From positions 186,001-250,000 of the IMG/VR virus record IMGVR_UViG_3300023202_000383: 64,000 bases of DNA. One strand, written 5' to 3'. The notes beneath the pieces were generated by a model. That model did not search any database and was not told the DNA's origin. It saw nothing but the letters and a program-made list of their open reading frames with translations. The first letter of the stretch is position 1. The number at the start of each line of letters is the position of its first letter. The position numbers and the translations under genes were made by a program. Shown here piece after piece: positions 5,993-32,420 of the stretch.

Positions 5993-6011
5993 TTTCCACG
6001 GTGGAAACCAA
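5993..6011. promoter_or_regulatory. Palindromic operator-like site TTTCCAC-G-GTGGAAA(CCAA)
   Basis: 15-bp odd palindrome; 19 nt identical to 32404-32422; ends just before the sulfotransferase ATG. Confidence 0.55.
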
Positions 6012-6012
6012 T

Positions 6013-6669
6013 ATGCAAATAAAATGCCTCAATGTCATTGGTGTCGAGCGCAGTGGCACCAATTGGCTTGAGGTATTATTACGCGATAATGTATGTACCG
6101 AAGTTTGGCCGCATAAGAAGCACGAGCCCAGGCCGCAACTGTTTACCGGTTGGAATAGAGAATACGGCAACAAAATGAAAGATGCTGGATTCTCGAATGA
6201 TAATGTTGGTTATGTTGCAATAATCAAAAACCCCTGGGCATGGGCGGTTAGTTTTACTAAAAAAGTCAATTGGAAAGTAAAACCGAGATTTAATATAACT
6301 GGCAAAGAATTGCCTAATGATCTTAAATTATGCATTGAGCATTATTGGAATGGTAACAATCTTTCATATATAAATATGGCCGAGAAATATCCAGATAGAT
6401 TTATGGTGGTCACATATGACGATATGATTTTGAATGATTGGCGCAAGACTATCAGAAAAATAGCTTCACATTTTGATATTGAATTAAATAGGCCACTTAG
6501 GAATACGCCAAAAACTATAGGCGCAAATAGAAAGGTACATAATAAGAAATTCAACTACGATTACTATAACACAAAACAATATTTACAAAAGTTGACCAAG
6601 AGCGAGATAAGATGGATAAATAATAACGCAAATGCTCGTGTAATGACTTACTGCGGCTTCGCTCTATAG
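6013..6669 (+). CDS. Sulfotransferase-family protein
   Basis: 5'-PAPS-binding-like G..RSGTNWL, KNPWAW..S and YDDM motifs; start ATG 6013 (track 5989). Confidence 0.7.
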   Translation: MQIKCLNVIGVERSGTNWLEVLLRDNVCTEVWPHKKHEPRPQLFTGWNREYGNKMKDAGFSNDNVGYVAIIKNPWAWAVSFTKKVNWKVKPRFNITGKELPNDLKLCIEHYWNGNNLSYINMAEKYPDRFMVVTYDDMILNDWRKTIRKIASHFDIELNRPLRNTPKTIGANRKVHNKKFNYDYYNTKQYLQKLTKSEIRWINNNANARVMTYCGFAL

Positions 6670-6934
6670 CTAAGCATGTTCTGCGTATGTTGAATTTCGC
6701 ATTGGCCCACGAAAGCATCATTTGAGCTAGAGCTTTCGATGTATAATAGTGACAAGCAGAGTCTCCATTTACTAAATATTCTTCGTCTTCTTCACTCCAC
6801 TCTATCTTCTCAACTATTTCTGGAGTCATTAATATATGGGAATCATGGAATCCGTTCCAGAAATATAGTTTCATTCCTAATTTAATGATTACACCGTCTG
6901 CTGTTTTCGGTCTATCGTCGACTTCTGATTTCAT
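6551..6934 (-). CDS. Hypothetical protein
   Basis: 127 aa ORF coupled to the upstream minus-strand gene; overlaps the convergent sulfotransferase end. Confidence 0.5.
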   Translation of the reverse strand: MKSEVDDRPKTADGVIIKLGMKLYFWNGFHDSHILMTPEIVEKIEWSEEDEEYLVNGDSACHYYTSKALAQMMLSWANAKFNIRRTCLAIERSRSKSLHEHLRYYLSILSRSWSTFVNIVLCYSNRS

Positions 6935-7637
6935 CTATTTCCATAAGCCTTTTAAATGACACTTGATAAATCGATGATTCTTTGTCCGCGTGGTCTAATG
7001 TTGTTTTGTACCAATGATCCGCCTGATAGTAATCGCCTAAATGTTTATATTTTACATGTGCAAGCCTATATGCAATAAATGCCATGTTCTCTTTGTCTCT
7101 ATTAGCTTCTGCGATAGCCCATGACTTAAACATATACTTTTCCCAGACATCCCAGTATTCACCAAGATCTGGATGCTTGGTAAGATACGGCAACATAGTG
7201 TCTGCTGCTATGTACTGAGCAGAAATGCTGCGATTGTTATCGCTAGACAATTCATATAAGATGTTGATACCATCTTGCCATGCGCCCTCTCCGATTTCTA
7301 ATTTGCCCCTCTTCCAGTCGGCCCATTGAGAGAACATAAGGATTGCCGTCGATTCGTATGCATATATATCGGTCTTGTCGATCTCTATGATCCTAAGTCC
7401 TATTTTTATTGGGATCTTATAGCTTCCAGGCGGATCATCCCACCCATTGTGGTGTTGAAAGTACGACATAGCATTGTATAATTTATCCTTGTCGAATTCT
7501 TTGTCCAGATTATTATAGACAGCCATATGCTTATTGTGGTCCGGATGCAGATTACTTTTGCGTTCGTGTTGAACGGTTTGGGGCGATGCACATCCGCCGA
7601 CATAAATTGCGATTATTAATGGCAGAATATATTTCAT
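6912..7637 (-). CDS. Putative lipoprotein with helical (TPR-like) C-terminus
   Basis: MKYILPLIIAIYVGG|C signal peptide and lipobox; AYRLAHV...YYQADHWYK helical repeat-like segment. Confidence 0.55.
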   Translation of the reverse strand: MKYILPLIIAIYVGGCASPQTVQHERKSNLHPDHNKHMAVYNNLDKEFDKDKLYNAMSYFQHHNGWDDPPGSYKIPIKIGLRIIEIDKTDIYAYESTAILMFSQWADWKRGKLEIGEGAWQDGINILYELSSDNNRSISAQYIAADTMLPYLTKHPDLGEYWDVWEKYMFKSWAIAEANRDKENMAFIAYRLAHVKYKHLGDYYQADHWYKTTLDHADKESSIYQVSFKRLMEIDEIRSRR

Positions 7638-8276: not shown

Positions 8277-8963
8277 ATGAATATTGCCATTGCTATGATA
8301 GCTTGCCAGAGGCAATGTATTGGTACTCGGACTGCTATTAAAAATCTAAGATTCGGCGGGTTTTACGGGCAGGTAGATGTATTTGCTGAACCTGGTTGTG
8401 AAATTAAAAATTCAGAATTGGTAACGGTTCATAGAAATAGTGAGAACTTGGGCGGCCAGGCCAACTGGAGGCAAGCTTTATGTTGGCTTTTAGAGAATAC
8501 TAATAGCAACCACCTGATGGTAGTTGAGGATGATGTGGATTATTGCATTAGTGCCAAGAGAGCTCTCTTGAAAGCAATAAATAAGCCATATGGGTACATT
8601 AGCTTGCACACCCCAGAGAAGGACCGAGAAGCGTTAAAAACCGAATCTGGATGGGTGGATTATAATACCGGCTATGTCTGGGGGACGCAGGCAATTTGCT
8701 TCAGCAGGCACACTCTAGAGAAGTTCATTAGACACGATAAGTTATGGGAAGGTCAGGAAGAACCATATGATTTTATAATGTGTCAATTTTATAAGAACGA
8801 AATAAGTGAGCCAACATACTACCATGTCCCGTCCTTGGCCGATCACGTCGGGTGGGAGGAAACAACACTGGCAAACAAAGATATTAATCTATCGCCGAAG
8901 CATTTCAACAAGAAATGGAGACGCGGGTTGATGTTCAACAAAGAGTGGACCGATGGTTATTGA
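8277..8963 (+). CDS. Glycosyltransferase (GT-A fold, GT25-like)
   Basis: LMVVEDDV DxD-type motif, GTQAICFSR, PSLADHVG; start ATG 8277 (track 8211). Confidence 0.6.
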   Translation: MNIAIAMIACQRQCIGTRTAIKNLRFGGFYGQVDVFAEPGCEIKNSELVTVHRNSENLGGQANWRQALCWLLENTNSNHLMVVEDDVDYCISAKRALLKAINKPYGYISLHTPEKDREALKTESGWVDYNTGYVWGTQAICFSRHTLEKFIRHDKLWEGQEEPYDFIMCQFYKNEISEPTYYHVPSLADHVGWEETTLANKDINLSPKHFNKKWRRGLMFNKEWTDGY

Positions 8964-9678
8964 TATTAGTTTGTTCGATGTCGTTTTTGAACCGCTGCAC
9001 GATAAAAGAGTTGGGTATGTCATTGGAGACGGAAATGTTGGTGATGATCTAATTAATGCAGCCACATTCCAGTTGATGGATAAATATGATATTGATTATG
9101 ATATATGGTTGCCAGGAGACAATGCTAAATATGATGTGCTTACATATAGCGGCGGCGGCAATATGGGGTCATACTACCCGAAAACTTTAGCAGTAAGGAG
9201 AGAAGCATTAAAGACTGGAATTCCAGTTATTATATTGCCGCAGTCATTTATGTGGCCGGAAGATCTTGGGTATTATAAAGTATACGCTAGGGAGTTAGCT
9301 AGCTTGGAATTATGTGATGGGATTTTGGCTCCTGATTTGGCTCTTGGCTATGAAGCAGATTTTGATATTGGCGAGCCTATTTATGATGAAGGCTTGTTCC
9401 TGCGAGGTGACAGGGAGGGCTTATTTGGGGATATAGGGAGCATTGGTGATCCTATATATATGGTAAAAGACTACATTGAATATGTTGAATTGGCTAGTAG
9501 ATATAATCATGTAATAACAGACAGACTACATTTTGCAATATCGGGTCTTTTGTGCAATCGCAAAGTTACGATTCTTCCAAATTCGTATCACAAAAACATG
9601 AGCATGTATGAGACTTGGTTAAAAGACTTGGGGTGTAACTATTCAGACTCCCCAATCCTTCCCAGCGTTGGCGACTAA
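8953..9678 (+). CDS. Polysaccharide pyruvyltransferase family protein
   Basis: GNVGDDLI, SGGGNMG, ILPQSF, YARELAS, APDLAL, VITDRLHFAI, NSYHKN motifs. Confidence 0.85.
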   Translation: MVIDISLFDVVFEPLHDKRVGYVIGDGNVGDDLINAATFQLMDKYDIDYDIWLPGDNAKYDVLTYSGGGNMGSYYPKTLAVRREALKTGIPVIILPQSFMWPEDLGYYKVYARELASLELCDGILAPDLALGYEADFDIGEPIYDEGLFLRGDREGLFGDIGSIGDPIYMVKDYIEYVELASRYNHVITDRLHFAISGLLCNRKVTILPNSYHKNMSMYETWLKDLGCNYSDSPILPSVGD

Positions 9679-10335
9679 TTGGCCTGCTTCGATGTTATTC
9701 AGGCTTATATTCATGTTTCTATCCATCATTGACCTGTCTTGATTCTCGATGTTGCCATATCTGTCTTCGTCTCCGTGATCTATCCATTTTAATATATCTG
9801 TCGGTTGCCAATAAAACTTTATTCCTATTGCTCTGGCACGCATGATTAAATCGTCATCTTCGTACCCATACCCCTCAAACTCTTCATTATATCCACCCAT
9901 ATGGTAAAACCACCACCTTTTTATTGCTATCCTTCCGAATGCTCCATTCCAATGTTTGGGTTCACTTTTTGAGGCCATAAAATTATAGCCGCCATTGAAT
10001 ACCTCTCTCAGTTTTTGCATGTATTCCTTGGTTACTATGTTATCCGCGTCGAGATTTACTAATATTGCCCCATTGCCCATCTTATGTGCTATGTTTTTAG
10101 CATGTGGCGGCCTAAAATACTTTGGTTTATCGGTTCTTTTGAATTTTAACTTGCCCGTGTTGATATGGCTTTGCATATCATTGTATATCCATTCTTCTAA
10201 TCCATCGGTTGAGCCATAATCTAGAACGACGAATTCCACATCATCTTGGCTATTATTTATGCTTTCTTGGAGTGTTTGTTTTAGATGGTGCAATCGATTC
10301 ATGCAAGAAGTGCAAAAACTAATATACATATCCAT
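9643..10335 (-). CDS. Glycosyltransferase GT2 / GT7-C (galactosyltransferase-like)
   Basis: VVLDYGSTD, NLDAD, GGYNEEFEGYGYEDDDLIMRA. Confidence 0.85.
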   Translation of the reverse strand: MDMYISFCTSCMNRLHHLKQTLQESINNSQDDVEFVVLDYGSTDGLEEWIYNDMQSHINTGKLKFKRTDKPKYFRPPHAKNIAHKMGNGAILVNLDADNIVTKEYMQKLREVFNGGYNFMASKSEPKHWNGAFGRIAIKRWWFYHMGGYNEEFEGYGYEDDDLIMRARAIGIKFYWQPTDILKWIDHGDEDRYGNIENQDRSMMDRNMNISLNNIEAGQLVANAGKDWGV

Positions 10336-10366
10336 ATCCTTGGAGGTTGGACCATTTAAATACTAA

Positions 10367-10450: not shown

Positions 10451-10469
10451 AGGCGTGAAAAGATAAATT

Positions 10470-11099
10470 ATGGAATTAAGACATCCTTTAAAGAATGATA
10501 TATGGGCTCTGGAACTATTCGACTTTATGGAGGGCGGCTTCTTTGTAGAAGCTGGTTGTACCAATGGAAAAAGCGGTTCTGCTACGTGGAATCTCGAAAA
10601 AGAATATGGATGGAATGGCCTGTGTGTGGAGCCAAACCACGTGATGTATGGGAAAATGATCAATGCTGGATGGAGATCATGTCATACAGCCAATGTTTGT
10701 TTATATGATAAGGAAGGTGAAATAACTTTTGCCGAATACCATGATGGCTCTGATGTATTCAGGAGCCATATTATAAATAACTGCAATGACAAAAATTTGC
10801 CAAAACCAGACAAGATATCAGTGAGACGATGCGTTTCGTTAACATCTCTATTGGATGAAATATCGGCACCAAAGATTATTCACTACTGCTGCTTAGATGT
10901 TGAAGGAGCCGAGTATAAGGTACTCAAAGGCATAGATTTCAATAAGTATAAGATATTGTCTATGTCTGTAGAAGTTAGTAAGAATTTCACTACTAAATGT
11001 GCTAAATTAATGCTTAAAAATGGGTATATTAGATCAACTAATAAATATACTGACAAACCATTTGAACAGTATTGGATTCACAATAGCATAACGCCCTAG
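10470..11099 (+). CDS. FkbM-family methyltransferase
   Basis: FFVEAGCTNG, GWNGLCVEPN, LDVEGAE..VLKGIDF motifs. Confidence 0.85.
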   Translation: MELRHPLKNDIWALELFDFMEGGFFVEAGCTNGKSGSATWNLEKEYGWNGLCVEPNHVMYGKMINAGWRSCHTANVCLYDKEGEITFAEYHDGSDVFRSHIINNCNDKNLPKPDKISVRRCVSLTSLLDEISAPKIIHYCCLDVEGAEYKVLKGIDFNKYKILSMSVEVSKNFTTKCAKLMLKNGYIRSTNKYTDKPFEQYWIHNSITP

Positions 11100-12548: not shown

Positions 12549-13238
12549 TCAGTTTTTGTTTGCGTTGGCTTGTTCGCTAACATCCTCCCATTTTTCCCAT
12601 TCTGCTTCTAGTTTGTCTCTCGGCAAATCTGGTAGGTGGTGCATGTGTATTACTTTTGGTCTAGCAACTAATTTAAAGTTTGACGACCTAACATTCCATT
12701 CTGGCGAAAGTTTTTGTACGTTTATGTCTCTGTTGAATATTAGGTGGTTTAGAACAGATTGGTCCGATGTCCACCCTTCTTGTTCACCTATCTCATTATA
12801 TCTATCTATTGCTTCGTCTAAAACATTTATCACTCTGTCATTCATCCTATAAAATATTACACCAGTATTTAAGTGGCCTGGGTTATATCCCAAAAACAGT
12901 TTCTTGTCGTAATCAACACTCATATCTTTAGCTGCTGCGATATCAAAATTAAACCACATCACATCTTCTGGCCGACTTAGTATCTCGGTATCTGAATCGA
13001 AGAAAACTGTTTGGTCATATGGTGATGCTCGTAATGCTCGGAGTTTTGTCAAACCCCAATTATCATCCTGCTCTATTGGTCTCTGAGTTATTTTCATAGA
13101 TCCTGCCAGGGGCAGAATCGCGTCTGTGAATATGGTTATTGGTATATCACTCAGTTTCCTTAGGCTTGCTATGCTATGCAAAGCCCATCTATTGTACATT
13201 TCTCCAGTAGCAATATAAACAGCCCCATATGTCGCCAT
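12549..13238 (-). CDS. Glycosyltransferase (GT8 / nucleotide-diphospho-sugar transferase-like)
   Basis: YDQTVFFDSD, LNTGVIFY, SDQSVLN, EWNVR. Confidence 0.8.
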   Translation of the reverse strand: MATYGAVYIATGEMYNRWALHSIASLRKLSDIPITIFTDAILPLAGSMKITQRPIEQDDNWGLTKLRALRASPYDQTVFFDSDTEILSRPEDVMWFNFDIAAAKDMSVDYDKKLFLGYNPGHLNTGVIFYRMNDRVINVLDEAIDRYNEIGEQEGWTSDQSVLNHLIFNRDINVQKLSPEWNVRSSNFKLVARPKVIHMHHLPDLPRDKLEAEWEKWEDVSEQANANKN

Positions 13239-13424: not shown

Positions 13425-13429
13425 ATCAA

Positions 13430-13854: not shown

Positions 13855-14292
13855 TCAGGTACTCTTAGGCCGAATGGATCGAAGATTCTTGTATTTCTCA
13901 AAATGAGGGCTGTCTTCTGGAATGAACAAATGATCGTGTGGCTGCATGTAGCGGATCGCGAAAGCAAGCACCGGACACGTGAGCACCGACTTCCACCGGG
14001 GATTGTAAACGGCGGGGGATCCACATCCATGGTAGAACTGGCCAAGCATGAGGCCCACATCTATAAAGATCGGCTTGATCTGGTCATATAATCTGTCAAT
14101 CGGCTCGCATGGTTTGCCTTTGGCTAGCGGGTAGCTGTCGAAAAACGTGAGAAAGGTCTTCAGGTTTGTCGGGTCGGCCGGCATGCCATCTCGGTCGACG
14201 TCATGTACGGGTTCTGTACGAAGAAAAAGCTCGATTTGTTCACACAGCTCTGTCTCAATATTGGCGCAGAAATTGTTGGGGCACGTTTCTTG
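13855..14292 (-). CDS. DUF6875-like protein (recalled family)
   Basis: GLMLGQFY..C..PAVYNP.W....CP..AFAIRYMQPHD.LF; frame open from 14292, first ATG at 14184. Confidence 0.5.
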   Translation of the reverse strand, partial: QETCPNNFCANIETELCEQIELFLRTEPVHDVDRDGMPADPTNLKTFLTFFDSYPLAKGKPCEPIDRLYDQIKPIFIDVGLMLGQFYHGCGSPAVYNPRWKSVLTCPVLAFAIRYMQPHDHLFIPEDSPHFEKYKNLRSIRPKST

Positions 14293-14557
14293 TTATATCT
14301 TCAGCTGCTTCTTGTTGATAAAAATAACTTGATACTACTAAATCCCACGGGTTTCTTACGAATGCGAATTTGAAATATTCTTCCCAACACCCAATATGTT
14401 CTTTTAATTTAGACGCTGGTACATGGTGAGCATATGGCGAGTTAGGATCATTTTTTGATCGTATATCTGAATAATCATTCAGCGCATATCTAATGCTGCT
14501 ACTGCCGGTCTTAGGTATAGCAATGAATATGAATTTGTACTTGTGTGACAGCCTCAC
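14255..14557 (-). pseudogene. Truncated sulfotransferase (Sulfotransfer_2-like N-half)
   Basis: FIFIAIPKTGSSSI and FAFVRNPWDLVVSSY are present, but the ORF ends at 100 aa where GC-richer sequence starts. Confidence 0.6.
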
Positions 14558-17466: not shown

Positions 17467-17928
17467 TTATGATCCCATTTCAAATCCCATTAATTTGACA
17501 TTGCTGTGTGGGGTGTTTGGTTTCTCGTAAATGTTCTCCAAAAACTTATGGTGGAAGTCTTTGGTTGTGTGAATCATCTCGTTGGCTAGCAATGCAACTT
17601 CTAGCCATGTTGGGTCTTCAACTACGTCGCTCGTGTAAGGTTTGCCACCGCCAGATAACCACCCATGTTGTAATTCTTCAAACACCACTCTTCCTTCAAC
17701 GGCGATATCGTCGAGGTTGCTTAATGGGATTTTAAAAATGTTGTTTTTATATGTCTGGTAATACCCGCAATATATAACCTTGGGTTCAAAAAGAGAATTT
17801 TCCATTATGTGTCTGATGACAAAGAATCTGTTGATTTTCCAATATAGCCAATTGTCGATGCTATATAATTTGTGGATGATCCAGTCAATAATGTTCGATA
17901 TTTTGATTTCTTTGAATTCAAAATTCAT
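17467..17928 (-). CDS. Hypothetical protein
   Basis: 153 aa ORF coupled to the upstream gene. Confidence 0.65.
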   Translation of the reverse strand: MNFEFKEIKISNIIDWIIHKLYSIDNWLYWKINRFFVIRHIMENSLFEPKVIYCGYYQTYKNNIFKIPLSNLDDIAVEGRVVFEELQHGWLSGGGKPYTSDVVEDPTWLEVALLANEMIHTTKDFHHKFLENIYEKPNTPHSNVKLMGFEMGS

Positions 17929-22456: not shown

Positions 22457-22791
22457 TCTTCGGACTTATCTTTATCTTTTTTGGATTTCTTCTCTTTTGC
22501 TTTCTTCTTGGGTTTCTCTCCACCCGGATCAATAAATAGTTTGGCAGCAGATGCTGGGCCTATAGATTTGGCATATGCTGACATCGTTTTGAAGTTCGGA
22601 TTCCTTCTAGATGTCTTGCCTTTAGATGCCTTTCCTAAGTGCCTAGATATAGTTGATGGATCGACCCCCAGTTCATTGGCAAGCTCTTCCTGAGACTTAT
22701 CCAATTTATCTAGAACATCTTGGGCGATGTTTGTTCTGTCTTTTAATTCCATCAGATGGAGGTTTTCTAATTTCATAATAAAATGATCCAA
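22453..22791 (-). CDS. XRE-type helix-turn-helix regulator
   Basis: SQEELANELGVDPSTISRH...NPNFKTM. Confidence 0.75.
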   Translation of the reverse strand: MDHFIMKLENLHLMELKDRTNIAQDVLDKLDKSQEELANELGVDPSTISRHLGKASKGKTSRRNPNFKTMSAYAKSIGPASAAKLFIDPGGEKPKKKAKEKKSKKDKDKSED

Positions 22792-25800: not shown

Positions 25801-27206
25801 GACTGTTAGACTCTGGCTTTAATCCATTTTTCGATCAGAATCTAGGCCATCCGTCCATAGAATTAGAATCAGCCATCGATTCTGTGTGCGTAATTGAGAC
25901 AACCGATCGTCCGATATTTAATTCAGCTGGCGTGTGCTCTTCTGGCGATATTAGCGATTACTCTGATGGCTATCCGGCAGTAAGTGGCTACCTGATGACT
26001 GATTTGGATGATCAGGAATATTTCCCTGGCCTTAGTGACAAAGCCGCAGCTTGTTTAGAGAAGCTACTAGAAATTCCGGAAGAAATGGGCACTGGCTCTG
26101 ATATACTGTTCTTACTGTCATCGCACATATTTGTAAATGATGGCGACGCTAGGTTTGGATTTTATAGACCATTCAGATTAGATTGTGGGTGCTTAACAAT
26201 TGCGCCCGAATGTGATGAAGGCACTGGTGACTGCTTTGGTATTACCGTTCCTGATGACTGTCTTGGCGGAGCAGACTTTGACCAGGTAGAATTTGTAAAC
26301 GATAGAATGGCCCTTGAGGAGAATTTTGGTGCTAGGGATATATGCTTAGACGATCCAAATAGTAGCCTGTTCGAATTAAGACAATTACTAGACGGTACTG
26401 TGTCTCCTCGTGGAACACGAGGCGATGAGCCATTTCCACCGAACGGATCTTTTTCATTTAAAGACACATGGGGTACAATATTCGACGTCGAGTGGTCTAC
26501 TACCGGAAACATATTTGAAATATCAATAACCACTAAGGAGCCTAGAATATGGGGCGAATCTTCACTAGATGGTGAAGTTGACAGTGGGACTGTGTTTAGA
26601 AGGGGAATAAGAACAACTGTTGTTCAGAGATACAGAATCGTGGGGGACGAGTACGTGCTAATAGCGCATTCTTCGACTGCGCCGCCGCCTGTTCGAGGCG
26701 TGCCTGTAAGCTCAGATGTCGATCAAGACGTGATACAGTCTATAGATCTATTTGCACATTCCGGCAGAAATATATCATTCATTAATCCGTTCTTATTTAA
26801 CTTAGACTTTAGGATGCAAGATTGCTTCGGTGGACTCTCTATTCCTCTACATGAAGTTGATGAAGGACCGGCTTGGTCTGATGCAGACGACGACACAGAT
26901 GGATTTATATGGGCCGAACCGTGTGGGCTTGGTGGAACTGAACCTGGCGCACCTATAGGTGATTCTGATGTTACTGGGTTTGGATCTCTCGGCCCCATGT
27001 GCTGGTTGGATATATGGACCGAAGACGAAGAATGCGAATGTGCAATTATACCATCAAGTTCTAGCAGTGCAAGCAGCTCTAGCAGCTCTACTTCTAGTGC
27101 TAGCAGTTCGTCTAGTTCTGGTAGCAGCTCATCAGAATTTGATGTATGCGTGGAAATATTTGGGTCGTCAAGCTCTAGTGGGTCGTCGTCCAGTAGCTCG
27201 GCATAG
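22893..27206 (+). CDS. Large baseplate wedge-like virion protein with C-terminal poly-Ser tracts
   Basis: P2 gpI-like segment LIPHLGALLGW...RRAFLRN.VRFQKLKGT...RELFDLFG; Cys/Asp-rich; ends SSSSSASSSSSSTSS... Confidence 0.7.
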   Translation: MAELKDFHNPSFVAWPLFTDRTAYKPFGQPVILVVPHVRDEEGRKFANSLPRRVSVCIEEGPDRCPVVQNPGVFSPDLDIFTVDLNERQLLDRKIDLNTVQYINSDGDLLPSGTQCDQADIDNNECRFRYTTRTGLVDDILFLSHADYFDLSDILLPTDSLPPGLYNLVYKVDFNVRKVNEDTDTFVCVDPDNFRIIRSTFLFNHPGDVLLQMVNGTPALYFTGESRSDDELIEFYRPFSDILQDIHDEQRFIEGINHVFDVQFNLIPHLGALLGWDIPYFPRSADSLRRAFLRNTVRFQKLKGTNRVVRELFDLFGFTIDITNLFWSADGSSYVGPGDSTKPEFIIEKKQVITTEPVLTEYDQDGFGNLNVPLLRRPAEDSITVRSFLVEEGSAADEELKKITGALSDDIDKFNDELRSDGCGNSPAQSIPTTFIPVTIPDDVSTAVDSLDDVADLDGVAGDSTIFIGEDGKASSIRTSNLSTAPVSLTNIRFDSNTNTLCLGFARYLDFSATGTVLYILVTYGFNDIRPPEQMENLQSNRFDIDIVFKNGQLPDSELLEFLIDMLFKVKAFHSLLRVIGISFDDETIETYNVNDLCVGGDFLQRCDTDAGQLQVPQEAIIPEECILSSDDPCFTILEETYGFREQDFTYRDRVLRGLEQEFNAYKALDPRNCRFTPTGQDRTKEDITQEVEIEDGKNTYFTPQRESLCDLDGDDFCYSGRVADQLIFQPTIPFVEVSRFKKCRLNLGVGVYYTYPAPDCGVKVPGLHSRGRSLLGNTQITTHGATRIFGKFDSTDPPRSLLYSERGDPRFDNLLGNLTRSYDGLIPQESRSLHFSDALYLENSVFANRHLAIQRFPLDVEKDNLAFAQHRLPTLGNLESDFTHSSYKLKPHDDELECACEIRFPNSLDAEITIGTDGDEYLSYDDESFAIEANGLPADISSLGTHDTSTFINADDVTHKVYLQHDNAGLLDSGFNPFFDQNLGHPSIELESAIDSVCVIETTDRPIFNSAGVCSSGDISDYSDGYPAVSGYLMTDLDDQEYFPGLSDKAAACLEKLLEIPEEMGTGSDILFLLSSHIFVNDGDARFGFYRPFRLDCGCLTIAPECDEGTGDCFGITVPDDCLGGADFDQVEFVNDRMALEENFGARDICLDDPNSSLFELRQLLDGTVSPRGTRGDEPFPPNGSFSFKDTWGTIFDVEWSTTGNIFEISITTKEPRIWGESSLDGEVDSGTVFRRGIRTTVVQRYRIVGDEYVLIAHSSTAPPPVRGVPVSSDVDQDVIQSIDLFAHSGRNISFINPFLFNLDFRMQDCFGGLSIPLHEVDEGPAWSDADDDTDGFIWAEPCGLGGTEPGAPIGDSDVTGFGSLGPMCWLDIWTEDEECECAIIPSSSSSASSSSSSTSSASSSSSSGSSSSEFDVCVEIFGSSSSSGSSSSSSA
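27054..27203 (+). repeat. Poly-serine low-complexity coding tract
   Basis: Two Ser runs separated by EFDVCVEIFG, encoded by mixed TCN/AGY codons. Confidence 0.9.
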
Positions 27207-27256: not shown

Positions 27257-28537
27257 ATGACGCTTCCAGACAATAGAATTAGATACCCGGCTGGACTGGT
27301 TGATTTTGCTGGGGAAGTTGGTCTTACTGGGCAAGACCATGATAGTTATCCTCTGCAAAATACACAAGCTCGATTTGACTGGATGCGGCTAACCCTAATA
27401 GGTTTGTTGAGCAATCAGTCTTCTGTGGGTGATGAGCCAACACAATTCAGGCAAGGCACTACGTGGTTTGATCTTGATGGTGGGCCAGATGGTGCTATGA
27501 AAGTCCGGATAAGGGAAGGGTCGGACGGTACCTGGACAACTCTTGCAGATGTAATACTTCTTGAAACAGTTGACGGCACTGTATTCACTTTAAGCGAATT
27601 CTTTCAGCAAGTTGCATTAGAGAATGGTATTGGTGATGCTACCTTAGTCGAAGCCGACCCAAACTCTCCGCAGCTATCGGTGACATTTAATTCCGGTACT
27701 GGTCAATTTATTATCTCTTTCGACCAAACGGAAGTAGATCATAAATTTATTAAAAATTCCGGAACGAAAACGCATGCCCAGATAGATTCCCATATTGATA
27801 GCACTAGCAACCCGCACGGGGTCACAGCGACCCAAGTTGGCAAGGATACTGCACAATGGAATGCTAACAGGATTCTTGGTAATACGGTAGCTGGCACGCC
27901 GTTAGATGATGAGGTGTTAAGATATGATAATTCTTCTAGCCAATGGATCCCTGGTAAGATAAATAATGATAATATAGAATCTGGTAGCATAACTGGAGAC
28001 AACATAGCGTCTGGTACAATCGAGAACGAAAATCTCGCACCTGGTACAGCAAGACTAAAATTCCAGTTATTAGATGCTATAGAAGGAGCTTTCACCTCTG
28101 GCGAATGGATGGCGGGGTCGGAAGGCGATATGTCCAAGACGTTTGAAATCGTCTTATCCGACATAATTAGTGCGGGCGGAGGTAGTGGTTCTGGATTTGC
28201 GTTTTCTGATATTTCGATGTTCTGGGTAGATATCGAGTTTGACATAAGTACTGGAGGCGTATTGCCAGCCAGTTGCCAACTTCGTCAATTCAGCGATTCG
28301 GTTGTTGTTGGCAGCGGTGGTTCCGGGACTGGCGGAGGCCCTGTTCTTGAGAGCTTTGACACTATTTATGAGATAGGATCGACTGCTGGTACTGCACCAG
28401 ATTCTATTACAAAATTCAGAACAACTATATTGGTTCCAAGGATTGAGAACAGCAGATTAAGATTCCAACTGTACTCAGACGACGCGAACTTTTCGGAACT
28501 CAAGTTCGCTGTGGTCGGAATAATGTCATACTTCTAA
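27257..28537 (+). CDS. Virion structural / tail-fibre-like protein
   Basis: THAQIDSHIDSTSNPHGVTATQVGKDTAQWNA module shared with 680..2359; ITGDNIASGTI repeats; AGGAGG RBS. Confidence 0.65.
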   Translation: MTLPDNRIRYPAGLVDFAGEVGLTGQDHDSYPLQNTQARFDWMRLTLIGLLSNQSSVGDEPTQFRQGTTWFDLDGGPDGAMKVRIREGSDGTWTTLADVILLETVDGTVFTLSEFFQQVALENGIGDATLVEADPNSPQLSVTFNSGTGQFIISFDQTEVDHKFIKNSGTKTHAQIDSHIDSTSNPHGVTATQVGKDTAQWNANRILGNTVAGTPLDDEVLRYDNSSSQWIPGKINNDNIESGSITGDNIASGTIENENLAPGTARLKFQLLDAIEGAFTSGEWMAGSEGDMSKTFEIVLSDIISAGGGSGSGFAFSDISMFWVDIEFDISTGGVLPASCQLRQFSDSVVVGSGGSGTGGGPVLESFDTIYEIGSTAGTAPDSITKFRTTILVPRIENSRLRFQLYSDDANFSELKFAVVGIMSYF

Positions 28538-28923
28538 TGGTTACTGCAGAACAGTTAGCCGAAATTATAGAGGAGATAGATCCATCCGCTAGAGAATGGG
28601 TCTATAACAGATATTGTAGGCATTGCGGTAGATATTTATACTCTGATTCTGAATGCAACAAATGTGGTTCGCCAGCAGTCGATCCAGTGACTAGACCGTT
28701 GCCATTTCAAACATCTGCTACTGCCATTGAAAAATTAGTTGTATGGGCTAAGAAGATGGCTAAAAATGATGTTGATGCTGAGATTATACATAATATAAAA
28801 TCTATCGTATATAAGTGGTACGATGTCGATGATGGTTCGTTTTCTAAGGATCCGAAAAAACATCATCAAGACATAATTGAATCAGTATATGACCACTTGA
28901 ACCAGCATGATAGAACAAGTTAG
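28537..28923 (+). CDS. Zinc-ribbon protein
   Basis: CRHCG...CNKCG. Confidence 0.65.
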   Translation: MVTAEQLAEIIEEIDPSAREWVYNRYCRHCGRYLYSDSECNKCGSPAVDPVTRPLPFQTSATAIEKLVVWAKKMAKNDVDAEIIHNIKSIVYKWYDVDDGSFSKDPKKHHQDIIESVYDHLNQHDRTS

Positions 28924-30730
28924 AATCTTAAGGGCCGGACCCAACAAGCATACTAAACAGGTATCTGCGAGGCGCGAGTGGGTTCCTGATGTATCAATAA
29001 TAACGTCAGTATATAATGGCGATCAATTTATTAAGCAGTTTCTCGATGATATTATAAGACAAAGCATTTTTAATAAATGCGAACTTATAATGCTGAATTG
29101 CAACTCTCCAGGCTATGAAGACGCAATCATTAGGCATTATGCAAAAGAGCATAAGAATATTATATATAAGAAATTAGACCATGATCCAGGCATATACAAC
29201 GCTTGGATCATGGGTATAAAAATGGCTAGGGGTAGATATATCACAAATGCTAATCTCGACGACAGGAAGCACCCCCAGAATCTTGAAATCCTTAGGGATG
29301 AACTAGATAACAACCCATCATATGATATTGTATGCGGTTTGACAAAGACTACGCCAATACCAAATGAGATGTGGGAGGATGTAAAATCCAACATAGTATG
29401 GTGGAGAGATGCACCTAATAACATAACAGTTGACTCATTGTTCAGAAAAGAAGACGGAGACATCGTTGGCAACAATGTTATACATTGCATGCCGATGTGG
29501 AGGAAGAAATTACATGCCAAATTTGGATATTTCGAAGAGTCGGAATACGGCACATTCTCTGATTGGGCTTTTTGGCTAAAATGTCTTTCTGGTGGTGCGC
29601 GGGCCAGAAAACTTAATCAAGTTATTGGTGTATACTTAGAAGATCCTGCGTCACACGGACATAGGAATTATGATTATAATATAGTCAACAAGATTATAGA
29701 TGAATATTGTATAAAAGGCAGATCGATAGGGTCGAAGATGAAGTCGGTCTATCATATTGAACACCATTATGATAGAAAATTAAATCTTGGGCAAGAAACA
29801 TTAAAACACATATATGGAGAACACCGGTCTGGGTGGTCATATGCCATGAGTAGCCTCGTGTCTCTTCACACTGCAAATGGTGTCGCGCTCGACCCTTTCA
29901 TAGAGAAGAAATTTAACTGGGGAAACAGCCCTGGTGATCTTAGGAACAATCACTCGCCGCACAATTACCCTTGGGTTGGATTTATTCACAACCCACCAAA
30001 TATGCCATGGTGGTTCCAATATGACCAATCGCCGCACGCAATATTTACTATGGAAAGCTGGAAGCAGAGTATGTTGCATTGCAAAGGCTTGTTCTGCTTG
30101 TCTAAATATCACAAAGATTGGCTAGAGACTAAGCTTGATGTGCCGGTGTGCAATCTCTACCATCCAACTGAGTTCCCAGAAGAAAAATTCGATTTAAATA
30201 GATATGCCGCAAATCAAGACAAGAAAATCATTCAAATTGGCTGGTGGCTTAGAAAACTAAATTCTATATATATGCTCCCAACTAAGAAGTTAAAAAGAGC
30301 GGTGTTGATGCCTAACAAACCATATGTGGCTGAACTGTACAGGAAAGAGAGGGCGGTCAATAACCTTAATGTAGATGAGTCCACGGCAGAGAAAATTTCA
30401 TTTGTTCCCAATAAATTATATGACTCACTTTTGGCTAGCAATCTTGTATTCGTTGATCTGTATGACTCAAGTGCTAATAACGCTGTTATTGAATGCATTG
30501 CTAGGAATACTCCAATAGTGGTCAGGCGAGTACCGGCTGTAATCGAATATCTTGGCGAGGGCTATCCACTCTATTTCGATTATTTAGATGACGCAGCTGC
30601 AAAAGCTGAGAATTTCGAATTAGTATCAGAAGCCCATCAATACCTGTGCGACAATCCTATAAAGGAAAAGTTAACTAGAGAGTATTTTCTAGAATCGTTC
30701 GCTGAGTCAGAGATATATAAGTCATTATGA
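28907..30730 (+). CDS. Two-domain glycosyltransferase (GT2 plus second, GT-B-like domain)
   Basis: VSIITSVYNGDQFI, YITNANLDD, SDWAFWLK; C-half PWVGFIHNPP...SANNAVIECIARNTP. Confidence 0.8.
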   Translation: MIEQVRILRAGPNKHTKQVSARREWVPDVSIITSVYNGDQFIKQFLDDIIRQSIFNKCELIMLNCNSPGYEDAIIRHYAKEHKNIIYKKLDHDPGIYNAWIMGIKMARGRYITNANLDDRKHPQNLEILRDELDNNPSYDIVCGLTKTTPIPNEMWEDVKSNIVWWRDAPNNITVDSLFRKEDGDIVGNNVIHCMPMWRKKLHAKFGYFEESEYGTFSDWAFWLKCLSGGARARKLNQVIGVYLEDPASHGHRNYDYNIVNKIIDEYCIKGRSIGSKMKSVYHIEHHYDRKLNLGQETLKHIYGEHRSGWSYAMSSLVSLHTANGVALDPFIEKKFNWGNSPGDLRNNHSPHNYPWVGFIHNPPNMPWWFQYDQSPHAIFTMESWKQSMLHCKGLFCLSKYHKDWLETKLDVPVCNLYHPTEFPEEKFDLNRYAANQDKKIIQIGWWLRKLNSIYMLPTKKLKRAVLMPNKPYVAELYRKERAVNNLNVDESTAEKISFVPNKLYDSLLASNLVFVDLYDSSANNAVIECIARNTPIVVRRVPAVIEYLGEGYPLYFDYLDDAAAKAENFELVSEAHQYLCDNPIKEKLTREYFLESFAESEIYKSL

Positions 30731-31434
30731 AAATAACAGCCATAACTTTGTCAGTTAATTATGGTGATATTTTAAAAATGACTTTGTTGCATATGCTCGA
30801 TCAGTTTGATTCAGTATATGTAGTTACCGACGAGCAGGATCGTTATACTAGGTCTTTAGCGCGTCGTTTAAATGCAAATCTTGTCGAGACCAACATATTT
30901 TATGATGGCGGAGCTAAATTTAATAAATCTAAAGCAATAAATTTAGCATATAGACTGGCAGATGCAAATGAATGGGTCGCACTAATAGATGCAGATATCA
31001 TGCTGCCAGAAAACTTTAGAGATATTGCCAACAATCATATATGCAATATCGACCACTTATACTCAGCACCAAGGGTGGTTTATAATACATATGAAGACCT
31101 GATCAACAATAATTACTCTAAAGACAATCTCGGTAAAAAGACCGGCTGGGGATACTTACAAATATTCCACCCAAAATGCCCAAAAATAAATAAATATCAA
31201 TTATATAATGAGAGATATCACGACGCTAGTAGTGGTGATGTAGAATTTCGATATCAATGGGGCGAAGACGAAATAATAACTTTGCCGATTGTCTTGAAGC
31301 ACTTGGGGCCAGTAAAATCAAACTGGAGTGGTAGGAGGGCACCTGAATTTAGCCCGCCAAAAACATGGAAAGATTCTATTTCAAAGCTTCGGCCTGCATT
31401 GCTTCCACCCTTGCTAGATGCAGATCGTGCTTAG
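30727..31434 (+). CDS. Glycosyltransferase (GT-A fold)
   Basis: [26 protein letters not shown]. Confidence 0.7.
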
Positions 31435-32386
31435 TCATATCCTCAATCAATTCTTTGAATCCATATTTTGGCTTCCATCCTAGTTTGTCTTTAGCTTTCG
31501 ATGGATTACCTATTAATCTTTCGACCTCTGTTGGTCTTAGATATCTTTCAGCAGTGTCGACGTGGCTTGTTGGATCAATATCTAAGTAATTGAAAGCTAT
31601 ATCTACAACTTCTTTGACTGAATGGTCCTCGCCTGTAGCTATTACATAATCACCTGGTTCGTCTTGTTGAAGCATCAGCCACATTGCTTCAACATAATCC
31701 CTGCTATGGCCCCAATCCCGCCTAGCATCTAAATTTCCTAGATATAGCTTATTCTGCAGCCCATGTTTTATTCTTCCAGCTGCCCTTGTTATCTTGCGTG
31801 TAACAAATGTTTCTCCACGCCGTGCGCTTTCATGGTTGAATAAAATTCCACAATTTATGTGCATCCCGTAACCTTCTCTATAATTTGTAGCTATATTGTG
31901 AGCATATAATTTAGCAGCAGCATATGGGCTTCTGGGATTAAATGGGGTAGATTCATCAGCTGGTTCTGATAGACTACCATACATTTCGCTACTTGACGCT
32001 TGATAAAATCTTATATCTTTCTTTGTCCTTTCTTTGTACGCCCTTATAGCTTCTAGGAGCTTTAGCGTACCTATACCCACGACCTCGCCAGTATACACAG
32101 GCTGCAAGAAAGATACTTTCACGTGGCTTTGAGCGGCCAGGTTGTATACTTCATCGGGTTCGAGATGGTTTATAAGATTCGAGAGAGACCCAGCGTCGGT
32201 CACATCGCCATAATGCAAATGTAGTCGCTCATGGCCAAATATGTGGTCAATTCTATCTGTGTTGAACGTAGATGCTCTTCTAATTATGCCGTGAACTTCG
32301 TAGTCCTTTTCTAGAAGCAATTCTGCTAGGAAAGACCCATCCTGGCCCGATATCCCACTTATAAGCGCAGTTTTCTGAGGCACCAA
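31376..32386 (-). CDS. gmd: GDP-mannose 4,6-dehydratase
   Basis: [70 protein letters not shown]. Confidence 0.96.
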
Positions 32387-32401
32387 ATTCTCCTAATTCG
32401 C

Positions 32402-32420
32402 GGTTTCCACGGTGGAAACC
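32402..32420. promoter_or_regulatory. 19-bp perfect odd palindrome GGTTTCCAC-G-GTGGAAACC
   Basis: Lies just upstream of the gmd RBS; second copy at 5993. Confidence 0.55.

What the first reader, a model, noticed from the sequence alone, without database searches (positions are those of the whole stretch)
5993..32420. Dispersed phage glycosylation toolkit: about 11 glycan enzymes, bracketed by a shared palindrome
Seen: GT25-like (8277), pyruvyltransferase (8953), GT2/GT7 (9643), FkbM methyltransferase (10470), GT8-like (12549), two sulfotransferases (6013; 14255 truncated), NodZ-like fucosyltransferase (17918), GT2 two-domain (28907), GT (30727) and Gmd (31376). Known: Gmd makes the precursor of GDP-fucose/rhamnose, and NodZ-type enzymes use GDP-fucose; pyruvyl-, sulfo- and methyltransferases decorate glycans. 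Inference: a full build-and-decorate pathway for an anionic, fucosylated glycan, either on the virion (compare giant-virus glycosylation) or on the host surface for superinfection exclusion. GDP-fucose synthase is not in this window.
Basis: partly seen in the sequence, partly recalled or inferred. Interest (0 to 1): 0.75.

Follow-up and report, generated by a model that had tools for sequence, protein, structure and literature searches.

The report
Jumbo phage glycan-building gene island
A very large phage from Namib salt-pan microbial mats carries about 22 sugar-building and sugar-decorating genes, half of them in this stretch; they include a complete GDP-fucose branch and several sulfotransferases, which is a rich but recognisable example of a known phage habit, and the 'bracketing' palindrome is a real two-copy element that does not mark the edges of the gene set.

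Summary
All 11 ORFs exist at the stated coordinates. Seven pass Pfam's curated cut-offs: sulfotransferase, pyruvyl transferase, GT2/GT7C, FkbM methyltransferase, a sulfotransferase fragment, a 607-aa GT2 and Gmd. One GT is borderline. The 'NodZ-like' ORF is strongly confirmed by a family profile (NodZ 1.9e-28, FUT8 1.4e-16) and by fold. The 'GT25-like' and 'GT8-like' ORFs are supported only as GT-A-fold leads.

The palindrome is real, with exactly two copies in the 256-kb record. Each copy sits just 5' of a start codon (sulfotransferase, gmd). It is not a boundary. The interval also holds 9 tRNA genes, DHFR, an exonuclease and a tail-fibre module. Eleven more glycan genes lie elsewhere in the genome, including the 'missing' GDP-fucose synthase, four intact sulfotransferase paralogs, a second FkbM and five GTs.

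No recombinase, initiating phosphoglycosyl transferase, polytopic membrane protein, PAPS or GDP-mannose synthesis gene, or base hydroxymethylase was found. All the enzymes look soluble.

Best reading: a cytoplasmic toolkit that uses host GDP-mannose, PAPS, PEP and SAM to make a fucosylated, methylated and anionic glycan. Virion proteins are the slightly favoured acceptor, because two GTs are coupled to tail-fibre genes. Host lipid-linked glycans are a close rival. DNA is unlikely. This is a new member of a known kind.

The parts
5989..6014 (.). Palindrome copy 1. The extended form is TTGATTTCCAC-G-GTGGAAACCAA (11-nt arms, 1 mismatch). It overlaps the stop codon of the homing-endonuclease-like ORF 4439-5992 and ends 2 nt before the sulfotransferase ATG at 6013.
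6013..6669 (+). Sulfotransferase of the Sulfotransfer_1/3 type, 218 aa from the ATG. PAPS-loop-like GVERSGT and KNPWAWAVS motifs are present.
8277..8963 (+). GT-A-fold glycosyltransferase with an EDDVD motif. The family is unresolved (GT25/GT2/GNT-I-like neighbours).
   Evidence: no Pfam hit
8953..9678 (+). Polysaccharide pyruvyl transferase. Its start overlaps the stop of the preceding GT.
9643..10335 (-). GT2 / GT7C-type glycosyltransferase. It has two paralogs at record positions 22352-23143 and 23092-23859.
10470..11099 (+). FkbM-family SAM methyltransferase. It has a paralog at record position 171416-172135(-).
12549..13238 (-). GT-A-fold nucleotide-sugar transferase with a DSD motif. Its neighbours are Nucleotid_trans/GT8-like.
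   Evidence: no Pfam hit
14255..14557 (-). Decayed Sulfotransfer_2 gene, holding the N-terminal 100 aa only. It has four intact paralogs elsewhere in the genome.
17918..18784 (-). GT23-type (NodZ/FUT8-like) fucosyltransferase with the motifs GVHIRG, LLGTDA and LSRCNHFVHGNSN.
22453..22791 (-). Small HTH_3/Xre-like DNA-binding protein inside the interval. It is a candidate binder of the palindrome, but this was not tested.
   Evidence: one search gave no result
22893..27206 (+). 1437-aa structural protein with a Tail_P2_I (baseplate gpI-like) domain. It is the first gene of the co-directional string that ends with the two GTs.
27257..28537 (+). Probable tail-fibre protein. It is a paralog of 680-2359 and of the N-terminus of the 1288-aa ORF that ends at window 649.
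   Evidence: (D2)
28537..28923 (+). 128-aa ORF of unknown function. It sits where a tail-fibre assembly gene would be expected and overlaps the GT2 start by 17 nt.
28907..30730 (+). Two-module glycosyltransferase: an N-terminal GT2 domain (residues 30-186) plus a conserved C-terminal module of about 330 aa with no Pfam family.
30727..31434 (+). Probable GT-A glycosyltransferase with borderline GT2 support and a DAD motif. It is an orphan. Its start overlaps the previous stop by 4 nt.
31376..32386 (-). GDP-mannose 4,6-dehydratase (Gmd) with [10 protein letters not shown] and YAAAK motifs.
32400..32425 (.). Palindrome copy 2. It contains the perfect palindrome GGTTTCCAC-G-GTGGAAACC and lies 14-20 nt upstream of the gmd start, ahead of its AGGAG ribosome-binding site.

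Best explanation
The interval is the richer of two glycan-gene islands in a lytic jumbo myovirus of at least 332 kb from Namib salt-pan mats. The phage encodes soluble enzymes that build and decorate an oligosaccharide in the infected cell's cytoplasm.

Shown:
- Gmd (in the window) and Fcl (record 156859-157866) together convert host GDP-mannose to GDP-L-fucose.
- A GT23-type enzyme is the likely fucose transferase.
- About ten further GT-A/GT-B transferases could add other sugars.
- One pyruvyl transferase, two FkbM methyltransferases and five intact sulfotransferases could add pyruvate ketal, methyl and sulfate groups.

Inferred:
- The donors GDP-mannose, PAPS, PEP and SAM come from the host.
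- The product is a fucose-containing, methylated, anionic glycan.
- The acceptor is most likely phage structural protein, that is, virion glycosylation (my estimate about 0.4). Two reasons: no lipid-carrier or export machinery is encoded, and two GT genes are translationally coupled to a baseplate/tail-fibre gene string.
- Host lipid-linked surface glycan is the next most likely acceptor (about 0.35).

The palindrome is a two-copy, operator-like or hairpin element placed directly 5' of the sulfotransferase and gmd start codons. It may co-regulate those two genes. It does not mark a cassette boundary.
For: - Family assignments.
- Fcl in the genome: best PDB sequence hits are GDP-L-fucose synthases at 2.9e-62, and the top NCBIfam model is Fcl. 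SDR motifs are intact in both Gmd and Fcl.
- Extra paralogs: four intact Sulfotransfer_2 genes, a second FkbM, one GT1 and three or four more GT2.
- No ORF with more than 6 predicted membrane segments; the only multi-segment large ORF is an 889-aa protein in the structural region.
- No Bac_transf, APS kinase or NTP_transferase.
- The GT2 and GT genes overlap the upstream tail-fibre-string ORFs by 17 and 4 nt. The string begins with a Tail_P2_I protein.
- No integrase or resolvase, and uniform GC, which fits a lytic lifestyle.
- Palindrome: two copies only, both intergenic and start-proximal.
- Precedent for phage gmd+fcl+NodZ+GT sets: cyanophage S-SCSM1 (PMC9602691). Precedent for virion glycosylation by phage GTs: Freeman et al. 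2023, as cited in PMC12619734.
Against: - There is no expression, glycan or virion data.
- The enzyme families are the same as those of bacterial EPS and O-antigen clusters. The closest cellular homologues of the 607-aa GT (47-50% identity) are in filamentous cyanobacteria, which make sulfated EPS (PMC8205485). This fits host-surface remodelling equally well.
- Only two of 22 genes are linked to structural genes. Most sit among tRNAs, homing endonucleases and small ORFs, as accessory 'moron' genes do.
- A candidate upstream motif (CAAANATA) that precedes the tail-sheath gene is absent before most glycan genes in the interval.
- About 76 kb of the 332-kb genome was not available, so the absences are provisional.
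- One sulfotransferase is decayed, so not every gene is under selection.
- The palindrome's function is untested. RNA-fold z-scores are unremarkable (-0.4 to -1.6).
Confidence: 0.5

Rival explanations
1. Host-surface remodelling. The phage enzymes act on the host's undecaprenyl-linked LPS, EPS or capsule intermediates at the cytoplasmic face. The infected cell then displays an altered fucosylated and sulfated surface that blocks superinfection or keeps progeny from adsorbing to lysing cells. Host machinery does the export.
For: - The families are those of polysaccharide clusters: PS_pyruv_trans, Sulfotransfer, FkbM, GT2, Gmd/Fcl.
- The nearest cellular homologues of the two-module GT are cyanobacterial, and cyanobacteria make sulfated EPS (PMC8205485).
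- This is the standard reading of cyanophage 'LPS genes' (PMC9602691).
Against: - No initiating transferase, flippase, polymerase, ligase or exporter is encoded in the 256 kb held.
- No lysogeny genes were found, so any conversion would last only one latent period.
- Two GTs are coupled to tail-fibre genes.
Confidence: 0.33
2. Loose collection of accessory genes. The genes were acquired independently, act on different substrates (some perhaps not glycans) and do not form one pathway. Some of them are decaying.
For: - The genes are dispersed over more than 200 kb on both strands, among tRNAs and at least 10 homing-endonuclease paralogs.
- One sulfotransferase is a fragment fused to a DUF6875 fragment.
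- One GT is an orphan with borderline support.
Against: - The precursor genes and their user match: Gmd, Fcl and a GT23 transferase in one genome.
- Paralog families are expanded (5 intact sulfotransferases, 3 GT2/7C, 2 FkbM), which suggests selection for the function.
- Glycan-gene density in the interval is about 8.7 times that of the rest of the record (11 genes in 26.4 kb against 11 in 230 kb; my count from the calls above).
Confidence: 0.12
3. DNA hypermodification. The GTs, and perhaps the sulfotransferases, decorate modified bases in phage DNA to evade restriction.
For: - Phage GTs often glycosylate DNA (Pyle et al. 2024, cited in PMC12619734).
- GT/sulfotransferase base-modification systems have been predicted (Iyer et al. 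2013, cited in PMC10829341).
- A PurZ-like gene whose stop overlaps a sulfotransferase start shows that this phage does alter its DNA chemistry.
Against: - The only thymidylate-synthase-family gene is a canonical ThyA (about 396 bits to solved ThyA structures), paired with DHFR.
- No TET/JBP was found (but that search had no positive control). No TGT/DpdA was found.
- Gmd, Fcl, a GT23 fucosyltransferase, a pyruvyl transferase and FkbM have no known role in DNA modification (my knowledge).
Confidence: 0.05
4. The two palindromes are the ends of a 26.4-kb mobile or recombining cassette that carries the toolkit.
For: A 21/22-nt direct repeat flanks the interval. Palindromic cores resemble recombinase binding sites.
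Against: - No serine or tyrosine recombinase was found in the record.
- Similarity does not extend beyond 22 nt.
- The interval contains core structural genes and tRNAs.
- Glycan genes continue outside the interval.
- The flanks are identical in the other assemblies, so no empty site is known.
Confidence: 0.04

Closest known systems
T4-like cyanophage 'cell-wall/LPS' auxiliary gene sets (e.g. S-SCSM1: gmd, fcl, NodZ, O-FucT, alpha-1,2-FucT, several GTs; PMC9602691)
   Same: A phage-encoded GDP-fucose branch, fucosyltransferase(s) and multiple GT2-type enzymes in a large myovirus. Function is inferred only from annotation.
   Different: - This phage has no psbA and no close similarity to any cultured phage.
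- It adds five intact sulfotransferases, a pyruvyl transferase and two FkbM methyltransferases.
- Its genes are dispersed in two islands rather than one cluster.
- It comes from a hypersaline mat and its host is unknown.
Mycobacteriophage virion glycosylation (Freeman et al. 2023, as cited in PMC12619734)
   Same: Soluble phage-encoded GTs modify capsid and tail proteins in the cytoplasm without export machinery. This is the mechanism I favour here.
   Different: Those systems have only a few GTs next to the structural genes and are experimentally shown. Here there are about 22 genes, mostly away from the structural genes, and no experiment.
Giant-virus autonomous glycosylation (chloroviruses, mimiviruses; my knowledge)
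   Same: Virus-encoded nucleotide-sugar enzymes (including GMD), multi-domain GTs and methyltransferases build fucose- and methyl-sugar-containing glycans on capsid proteins.
   Different: Those are eukaryotic viruses with unrelated virion architecture. To my knowledge no sulfation or pyruvylation is documented there.
Rhizobial Nod-factor decoration enzymes (NodZ fucosyltransferase, with sulfo- and methyl-transferases; NodZ structures 2hhc/3six)
   Same: ORF 17918-18784 belongs to the same GT23-type superfamily as NodZ by profile, fold and motifs. The combination of fucose, sulfate and methyl groups is chemically analogous.
   Different: Identity to NodZ is only about 16-17%, and the protein itself does not reach Pfam NodZ. 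No chitin-oligosaccharide synthesis genes are present. The acceptor is unknown.
Cyanobacterial sulfated EPS (synechan) clusters (PMC8205485)
   Same: Sulfotransferases occur together with GTs. The closest cellular homologues of the 607-aa two-module GT are cyanobacterial.
   Different: Those clusters include Wzx/Wzy/Wza-type polymerisation and export genes. None is present here.
Single glycan-decorating genes annotated in other large phages (Rhizobium phages RHph_TM30/TM40 pyruvyl transferase; Ralstonia phiRSL1 and uncultured huge-phage sulfotransferase-like genes)
   Same: Distant homologues at 25-30% identity.
   Different: Those are isolated genes. Here they are combined and expanded in one genome.

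Membership tests
GDP-mannose 4,6-dehydratase (NCBIfam TIGR01472 / Pfam PF16363) | Full-length match above the curated cut-off | tested here: met
   485.1 bits against a cut-off of 415, covering profile positions 1-341 of 342. PF16363 scores 447.8 bits.
GDP-mannose 4,6-dehydratase (NCBIfam TIGR01472 / Pfam PF16363) | SDR cofactor and catalytic motifs (GxxGxxG, S/T-x-E, YxxxK) | tested here: met
   GISGQDG at residue 11, SSE at 132, YAAAK at 155.
GDP-L-fucose synthase Fcl (NF047922), record 156859-157866(-), outside the window | Score above NCBIfam's equivalog cut-off | tested here: not met
   278.8 bits against a cut-off of 500. Fcl is still by far the best model; the next is at 115 bits.
GDP-L-fucose synthase Fcl (NF047922), record 156859-157866(-), outside the window | Nearest characterised relatives are Fcl, and the SDR motifs are intact | tested here: met
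   The top 15 PDB sequence hits are all GDP-fucose synthases, from 2.9e-62 to 5.5e-37. GGAGFLG and YGVAK are present.
GT23-type fucosyltransferase superfamily (NodZ / FUT8 / POFUT) | Direct Pfam NodZ, FUT8_N_cat or O-FucT match | tested here: not met
   The protein itself has no Pfam hit. 45 of 83 aligned relatives hit NodZ and 12 hit FUT8_N_cat.
GT23-type fucosyltransferase superfamily (NodZ / FUT8 / POFUT) | Profile-level homology to solved members | tested here: met
   The profile of alignment A1 hits NodZ 2hhc at 1.9e-28, FUT8 at 1.4e-16 and POFUT1 at 5e-4.
GT23-type fucosyltransferase superfamily (NodZ / FUT8 / POFUT) | GT-B-like fucosyltransferase fold | tested here: met
   The model has pLDDT 91.9. 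Its top 50 Foldseek PDB hits are all NodZ, FUT8, POFUT1/2 or plant FUT1, with TM 0.54-0.64 for the best. Atlas structure neighbours have TM 0.66-0.80.
GT23-type fucosyltransferase superfamily (NodZ / FUT8 / POFUT) | Conserved H-x-R (GDP-fucose-binding) motif and the two downstream motifs | tested here: met
   H151, R153 and S262 are invariant; G154, D200 and G260 are conserved in at least 90% of the 83 sequences. GVHIRG aligns with NodZ GVHVRH and FUT8 GVHVRR.
GT23-type fucosyltransferase superfamily (NodZ / FUT8 / POFUT) | GDP-fucose donor, linkage and acceptor | not testable with these tools
   Needs an enzyme assay.
Polysaccharide pyruvyl transferase (PF04230) | Match above the gathering score over the whole profile | tested here: met
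   50.8 bits against 25.3, covering profile positions 1-279 of 280.
FkbM methyltransferase (PF05050) | Match above the gathering score | tested here: met
   40.3 bits against 22.7. The paralog scores 72.5 bits.
PAPS-dependent sulfotransferases (PF00685 / PF13469 / PF03567) | Match above the gathering score and a 5'-phosphosulfate-binding loop | tested here: met
   ORF 6013: 30.7 bits against 22 and 27. The four paralogs score 50-72 bits over the full profile. All have a PKTGG(S/T)S-type loop.
PAPS-dependent sulfotransferases (PF00685 / PF13469 / PF03567) | ORF 14255-14557 is a complete enzyme | tested here: not met
   It covers profile positions 5-102 of 252 only and stops after 100 aa.
GT2 (PF00535) | Match above the gathering score | tested here: met
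   9643-10335 scores 42.1 bits and 28907-30730 scores 61.1 bits. 30727-31434 scores 23.0 against 23.3, just below.
GT25 (PF01755) for 8277-8963 | Pfam or CAZy-type HMM match | tested here: not met
   No Pfam hit. Atlas neighbours are mostly unannotated, and 12-17% of the members of two clusters carry PF01755. A GT-A fold is likely, but the family is open.
GT8 (PF01501) for 12549-13238 | Pfam or CAZy-type HMM match | tested here: not met
   No Pfam hit. Atlas neighbours carry PF03407 and PF01501, with TM 0.72-0.81. Glycogenin is hit only at E of about 1.
Self-sufficient surface-polysaccharide pathway (Wzx/Wzy- or ABC-dependent) | Initiating phosphoglycosyl transferase, flippase/polymerase/ligase or exporter | tested here: not met
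   No PF02397. No ORF has 8 or more hydrophobic segments by a crude Kyte-Doolittle scan. Only 256 of about 332 kb were searched.
Phage DNA-base glycosylation system (T4-type or TET/JBP-type) | A base hydroxymethylase or dioxygenase that creates the acceptor | tested here: not met
   The single TS-family gene is a canonical ThyA. No Tet_JBP was found, but that search had no positive control.
Mobile cassette bounded by repeats | Cognate recombinase or transposase, and an empty site | tested here: not met
   No resolvase or integrase. The other assemblies are identical at the left copy.
Intrinsic terminator | GC-rich hairpin followed by a U-tract | tested here: not met
   Neither copy was called by the scan, and no T-run follows on either strand.

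The most novel reading that the evidence does not exclude
The phage coats its own particle, tail fibres and perhaps the capsid, with a sulfated, pyruvylated, methyl-fucose glycan built entirely by phage enzymes. It would be the first sulfated glycan on a bacteriophage virion. It might be an adaptation to hypersaline mats, through charge shielding, adhesion to sulfated EPS, or masking of receptor-binding proteins. The two-copy palindrome would be the operator of a phage regulator that gates sulfation and GDP-fucose supply.
Probability: 0.15. Interest if true: 0.8.

Novelty: new member of a known kind. Interest (0 to 1): 0.42.

Why it matters
Phage-encoded glycan genes are usually noted and then left unexplained. 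This genome offers an unusually complete and testable set:
- a matched precursor pathway (Gmd plus Fcl) and its user (a GT23 fucosyltransferase);
- three kinds of decorating enzyme, including an expanded sulfotransferase family, which is rare in phages.

If the glycan is on the virion, phage particle glycosylation would extend beyond actinobacteriophages and would add sulfation to its chemistry. If it is on the host, it would be a case of transient surface conversion by a lytic jumbo phage.

In either case the enzymes are candidate tools for making fucosylated or sulfated glycans. The work also corrects the idea that the palindrome defines a cassette.

Tried and rejected
- Megablast and tblastn against 50,697 phage records found no near relative. 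Only distant tail-sheath and ATPase matches appeared.
- IMG/VR scans: Gmd relatives are abundant but at most 66% identical and uninformative. The fucosyltransferase has no close relative there.
- The palindrome 19-mer occurs once elsewhere in IMG/VR, inside a coding ORF of an unrelated contig. I judge that a chance match.
- A Gmd scan of 185,579 species genomes gave about 60-63% identity to Planctomycetota, Verrucomicrobiota, Cyanobacteria and others alike, so it gives no host call. No psbA was found.
- Single-sequence AF2 of the 607-aa GT failed (pLDDT 30.5), so its C-terminal module has no fold assignment. Only weak hints point to SenB-type GT-B enzymes, at E of about 0.1.
- Complex prediction of the HTH dimer with the palindrome was not folded by the service. 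This is no evidence either way.
- Sigma-70 promoter and terminator scans were not above shuffles.
- The other assemblies are identical around the left palindrome, so no conservation test was possible. The Gmd look-up by exact sequence found nothing.
- Sequencing-run search found only DNA metagenomes of the same study. No RNA runs were found, so expression timing could not be examined and read laying was not used.
- The QueC-like ORF (36 bits) has no TGT/DpdA partner, so I did not pursue a 7-deazaguanine reading.

Full report
**Context.** The window is positions 186001-250000 of a 256,507-bp IMG/VR virus record. The record is labelled 'provirus' and CheckV estimates it at 70% complete. The same phage occurs on JGI metagenome contigs of 332,374 and 301,007 bp. 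Those metagenomes come from Namib Desert salt-pan microbial mats and halites (bioRxiv 10.1101/2022.02.18.481119).

The phage is a myovirus. It has a tail sheath, a portal and a large terminase, the latter two oversized as if they carry inteins, plus a UvsX-like recombinase. No cultured relative is close. GC content is uniform at about 0.37-0.46. No integrase or resolvase was found, so the 'provirus' label is doubtful.

**The observation.** All eleven ORFs exist.
- Seven reach Pfam's gathering scores: sulfotransferase 6013-6669, pyruvyl transferase 8953-9678, GT2/GT7C 9643-10335, FkbM methyltransferase 10470-11099, a Sulfotransfer_2 fragment 14255-14557, the 607-aa GT2 28907-30730, and Gmd 31376-32386.
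- Gmd also exceeds NCBIfam's equivalog cut-off (485 against 415 bits) and keeps its GxxGxxG, SSE and YxxxK motifs.
- ORF 30727-31434 is borderline (23.0 against 23.3 bits). It has a DAD motif and is an orphan.
- The truncated sulfotransferase is confirmed. It holds 100 residues including the PAPS loop, then a stop, then the C-terminal part of an unrelated DUF6875 in another frame.

**The three ORFs without Pfam hits.** ORF 17918-18784 is a solid GT23-type fucosyltransferase.
- HMMER against 1.84 billion representatives found 879 relatives.
- An 83-sequence alignment has invariant H151, R153 and S262.
- Its profile hits NodZ at 1.9e-28 and FUT8 at 1.4e-16, with GVHIRG aligned to the GVHVR(H/R) GDP-fucose motif.
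- 45 of the 83 relatives hit Pfam NodZ.
- The AF2 model (pLDDT 91.9) matches only fucosyltransferases among its top 50 PDB hits.

ORFs 8277-8963 and 12549-13238 are GT-A-fold transferases by ESM-Atlas neighbours and DxD motifs. The specific GT25 and GT8 labels are not supported by any HMM.

**Beyond the interval.** The 'missing' GDP-L-fucose synthase is in the genome at record 156859-157866(-). Its 15 best PDB sequence hits are all Fcl, down to 2.9e-62. Fcl is also the best NCBIfam model, though below the equivalog cut-off.

The record also holds:
- four intact Sulfotransfer_2 paralogs (18376, 120180, 139415, 150698);
- a second FkbM (171416);
- a GT1 (21286);
- two paralogs of the GT2/GT7C (22352, 23092);
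- a strong GT2 (32238) and a weak one (172134).

That makes about 22 glycan genes in total. Eleven are in the 26.4-kb interval and eleven in the other 230 kb, a density ratio of about 8.7. A second island lies at 18-33 kb.

Glycan genes occupy only 33% of the interval. The rest includes DHFR, an RNase T-like exonuclease, a QueC-like ORF, an HNH gene, an HTH gene, about 20 small unknown ORFs, nine minus-strand tRNA genes and a baseplate/tail-fibre string.

**What is absent in the 256 kb held.**
- APS kinase.
- Sugar-1-phosphate nucleotidyltransferase.
- Bac_transf phosphoglycosyl transferase.
- Any ORF with 8 or more hydrophobic segments.

So the phage must take GDP-mannose and PAPS from the host. 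It encodes nothing to start a lipid-linked glycan or to move it across a membrane.

For the DNA alternative, the only thymidylate-synthase-family gene is a canonical ThyA, which pairs with DHFR. No TET/JBP (no positive control) and no TGT/DpdA was found.

**The palindrome.** TTTCCACGGTGGAAACCAA[T/A]AT occurs at 5993 and 32404 and nowhere else in the record.
- Copy 2 contains a perfect 9+1+9 palindrome. Copy 1 is an 11+1+11 palindrome with one mismatch.
- A repeated 19-mer alone would not be rare in 256 kb: my estimate is about 0.2 expected, and one search lists about 30 repeated loci, mostly tandem repeats, tRNAs and endonuclease paralogs. That the repeat is also a palindrome, and that both copies are intergenic and start-proximal, makes chance unlikely.
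- Copy 1 abuts the stop codon of a homing-endonuclease-like ORF and ends 2 nt before the sulfotransferase ATG. Copy 2 lies just upstream of gmd's AGGAG site.
- Both genes read inward.
- Each copy can form an 6-8-bp hairpin, but the fold z-scores are ordinary and there is no U-tract.
- I read it as an operator-like or leader-hairpin element shared by two genes. It is not a cassette boundary. An HTH protein encoded at 22453-22791 is a candidate binder, but the complex prediction was not run by the service.

**Mechanism.** Shown by sequence: a matched precursor pair (Gmd, Fcl), a GT23 transferase, other GTs, and pyruvyl-, methyl- and sulfo-transferases, all apparently soluble.

Inferred: cytoplasmic assembly of a fucose-containing, methylated, anionic glycan from host donors. 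The acceptor is the open question.

In favour of virion proteins:
- no membrane or export genes;
- a lytic lifestyle;
- the 607-aa GT and the next GT overlap, by 17 and 4 nt, a co-directional string that begins with a 1437-aa Tail_P2_I protein and a tail-fibre paralog;
- experimental precedent in mycobacteriophages (cited in PMC12619734).

In favour of the host surface:
- the families are those of EPS and O-antigen clusters;
- the closest cellular homologues of the two-module GT (47-50% identity) are from filamentous cyanobacteria, which make sulfated EPS (PMC8205485);
- this is the usual reading for cyanophage gene sets such as S-SCSM1 (PMC9602691).

My estimates are about 0.4 for virion proteins, 0.33-0.35 for the host surface, about 0.12 for uncoordinated accessory genes and about 0.05 for DNA.

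**Comparison and novelty.** A phage with gmd, fcl, NodZ-type and other fucosyltransferases and several GTs has already been described (S-SCSM1, PMC9602691). Pyruvyl transferases are annotated in 190-208-kb Rhizobium phages. Sulfotransferase-like genes occur in phiRSL1 and in uncultured huge phages.

What is unusual here is the combination and the numbers, especially five intact sulfotransferases, in an uncultured phage of at least 332 kb from a hypersaline mat. This is a new member of a known kind. It is worth an experimental look but is not a conceptual surprise.

The C-terminal ~330-aa module of the 607-aa GT has no Pfam family. Elsewhere it is found alone or fused to GT2, sulfotransferase or pyruvyl-transferase domains. 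It is a small lead of its own.

Noticed in passing
outside the window: record 18948-20156(-) = L186:1951-3156:-: A 402-aa PurA-family ORF. Its best solved relatives are phage PurZ-type enzymes (6fko/6fm1 at 4e-28; 7odx, labelled PurZ, at 2.5e-23), ahead of cellular adenylosuccinate synthetases (1e-9 to 1e-12). The phage may therefore use 2-aminoadenine (Z) in its DNA. The ORF's stop overlaps the start of a Sulfotransfer_2 paralog.
   Followed up: partly
window 4439-5992, 48334-50112, 57521-59023, 60911-62428; record 33699, 36778, 63349, 67937, 75536, 111323: At least ten paralogous ORFs of 500-610 aa combine HNH/homing-endonuclease PHROGs with a Pfam 'Mom' domain. The inverted repeats I1/I2 (57534-58222 against 61733-62412) are two of these paralogs facing each other.
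   Followed up: partly
window 36328-38415; record 47576-49741, 100860-104144, 104748-107738: A helicase carrying a LAGLIDADG insert, and oversized UvsX (721 aa), TerL (1094 aa) and portal (996 aa) genes. Several inteins are likely.
   Followed up: no
window 10366-20979: Nine tRNA genes (Tyr, Asp, Ile, Trp, Ala x2, Gln, Glu, Phe), all on the minus strand and interleaved with the glycan genes. The listed ORFs 12243-12548 and 19098-19346 overlap tRNAs and are probably spurious. The QueC-like gene probably starts at 20690, just downstream of tRNA-Glu.
   Followed up: partly
outside the window: record 25569-26615(+) = L012:5569-6612: An ORF with a strong match to Pfam Volactin (5.9e-49), an actin-like family. 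This suggests a phage-encoded cytoskeletal protein.
   Followed up: no
window 28907-30730, residues ~280-607: A conserved ~330-aa module with no Pfam family. In other organisms it occurs alone or fused to GT2, Sulfotransfer_1/3, Sulfotransfer_2 or PS_pyruv_trans domains. There are weak hints to SenB-type GT-B glycosyltransferases, at E of about 0.1.
   Followed up: partly
whole record; e.g. window 22812 and 22827 (-), 35637 (+), 50120 (+), 59035 (-), 60899 (+): The motif CAAANATA, often TCAAATATA, lies 10-75 nt upstream of 39 same-strand ORF starts. These include the tail-sheath gene, the ORF leading into Fcl and the ORF leading into sulfotransferase 150698. It may be a phage promoter or leader element. 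It is absent before most glycan genes of the interval.
   Followed up: partly
window 13855-14184 (-): A C-terminal fragment (profile positions 76-165 of 178) of a DUF6875 protein, directly downstream of the sulfotransferase fragment. The two gene remnants appear to have been joined by a deletion.
   Followed up: partly
window 50001-52000: A local GC peak (0.53 against about 0.42) over a MoxR/CobS-like ATPase gene (50139-51371, phrog_1297 at 5.6e-57). This may be a recent acquisition.
   Followed up: no
window 59819-60045: Imperfect 9- and 45-nt tandem repeats encoding a Gln/Gly/Asp-rich low-complexity insert inside the HNH-endonuclease-like ORF 59210-60868.
   Followed up: no
whole record: The IMG/VR 'provirus' label looks wrong. 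No integrase or resolvase was found, GC is uniform, no host-like flank is visible, and the same sequence sits on a 332-kb contig.
   Followed up: partly
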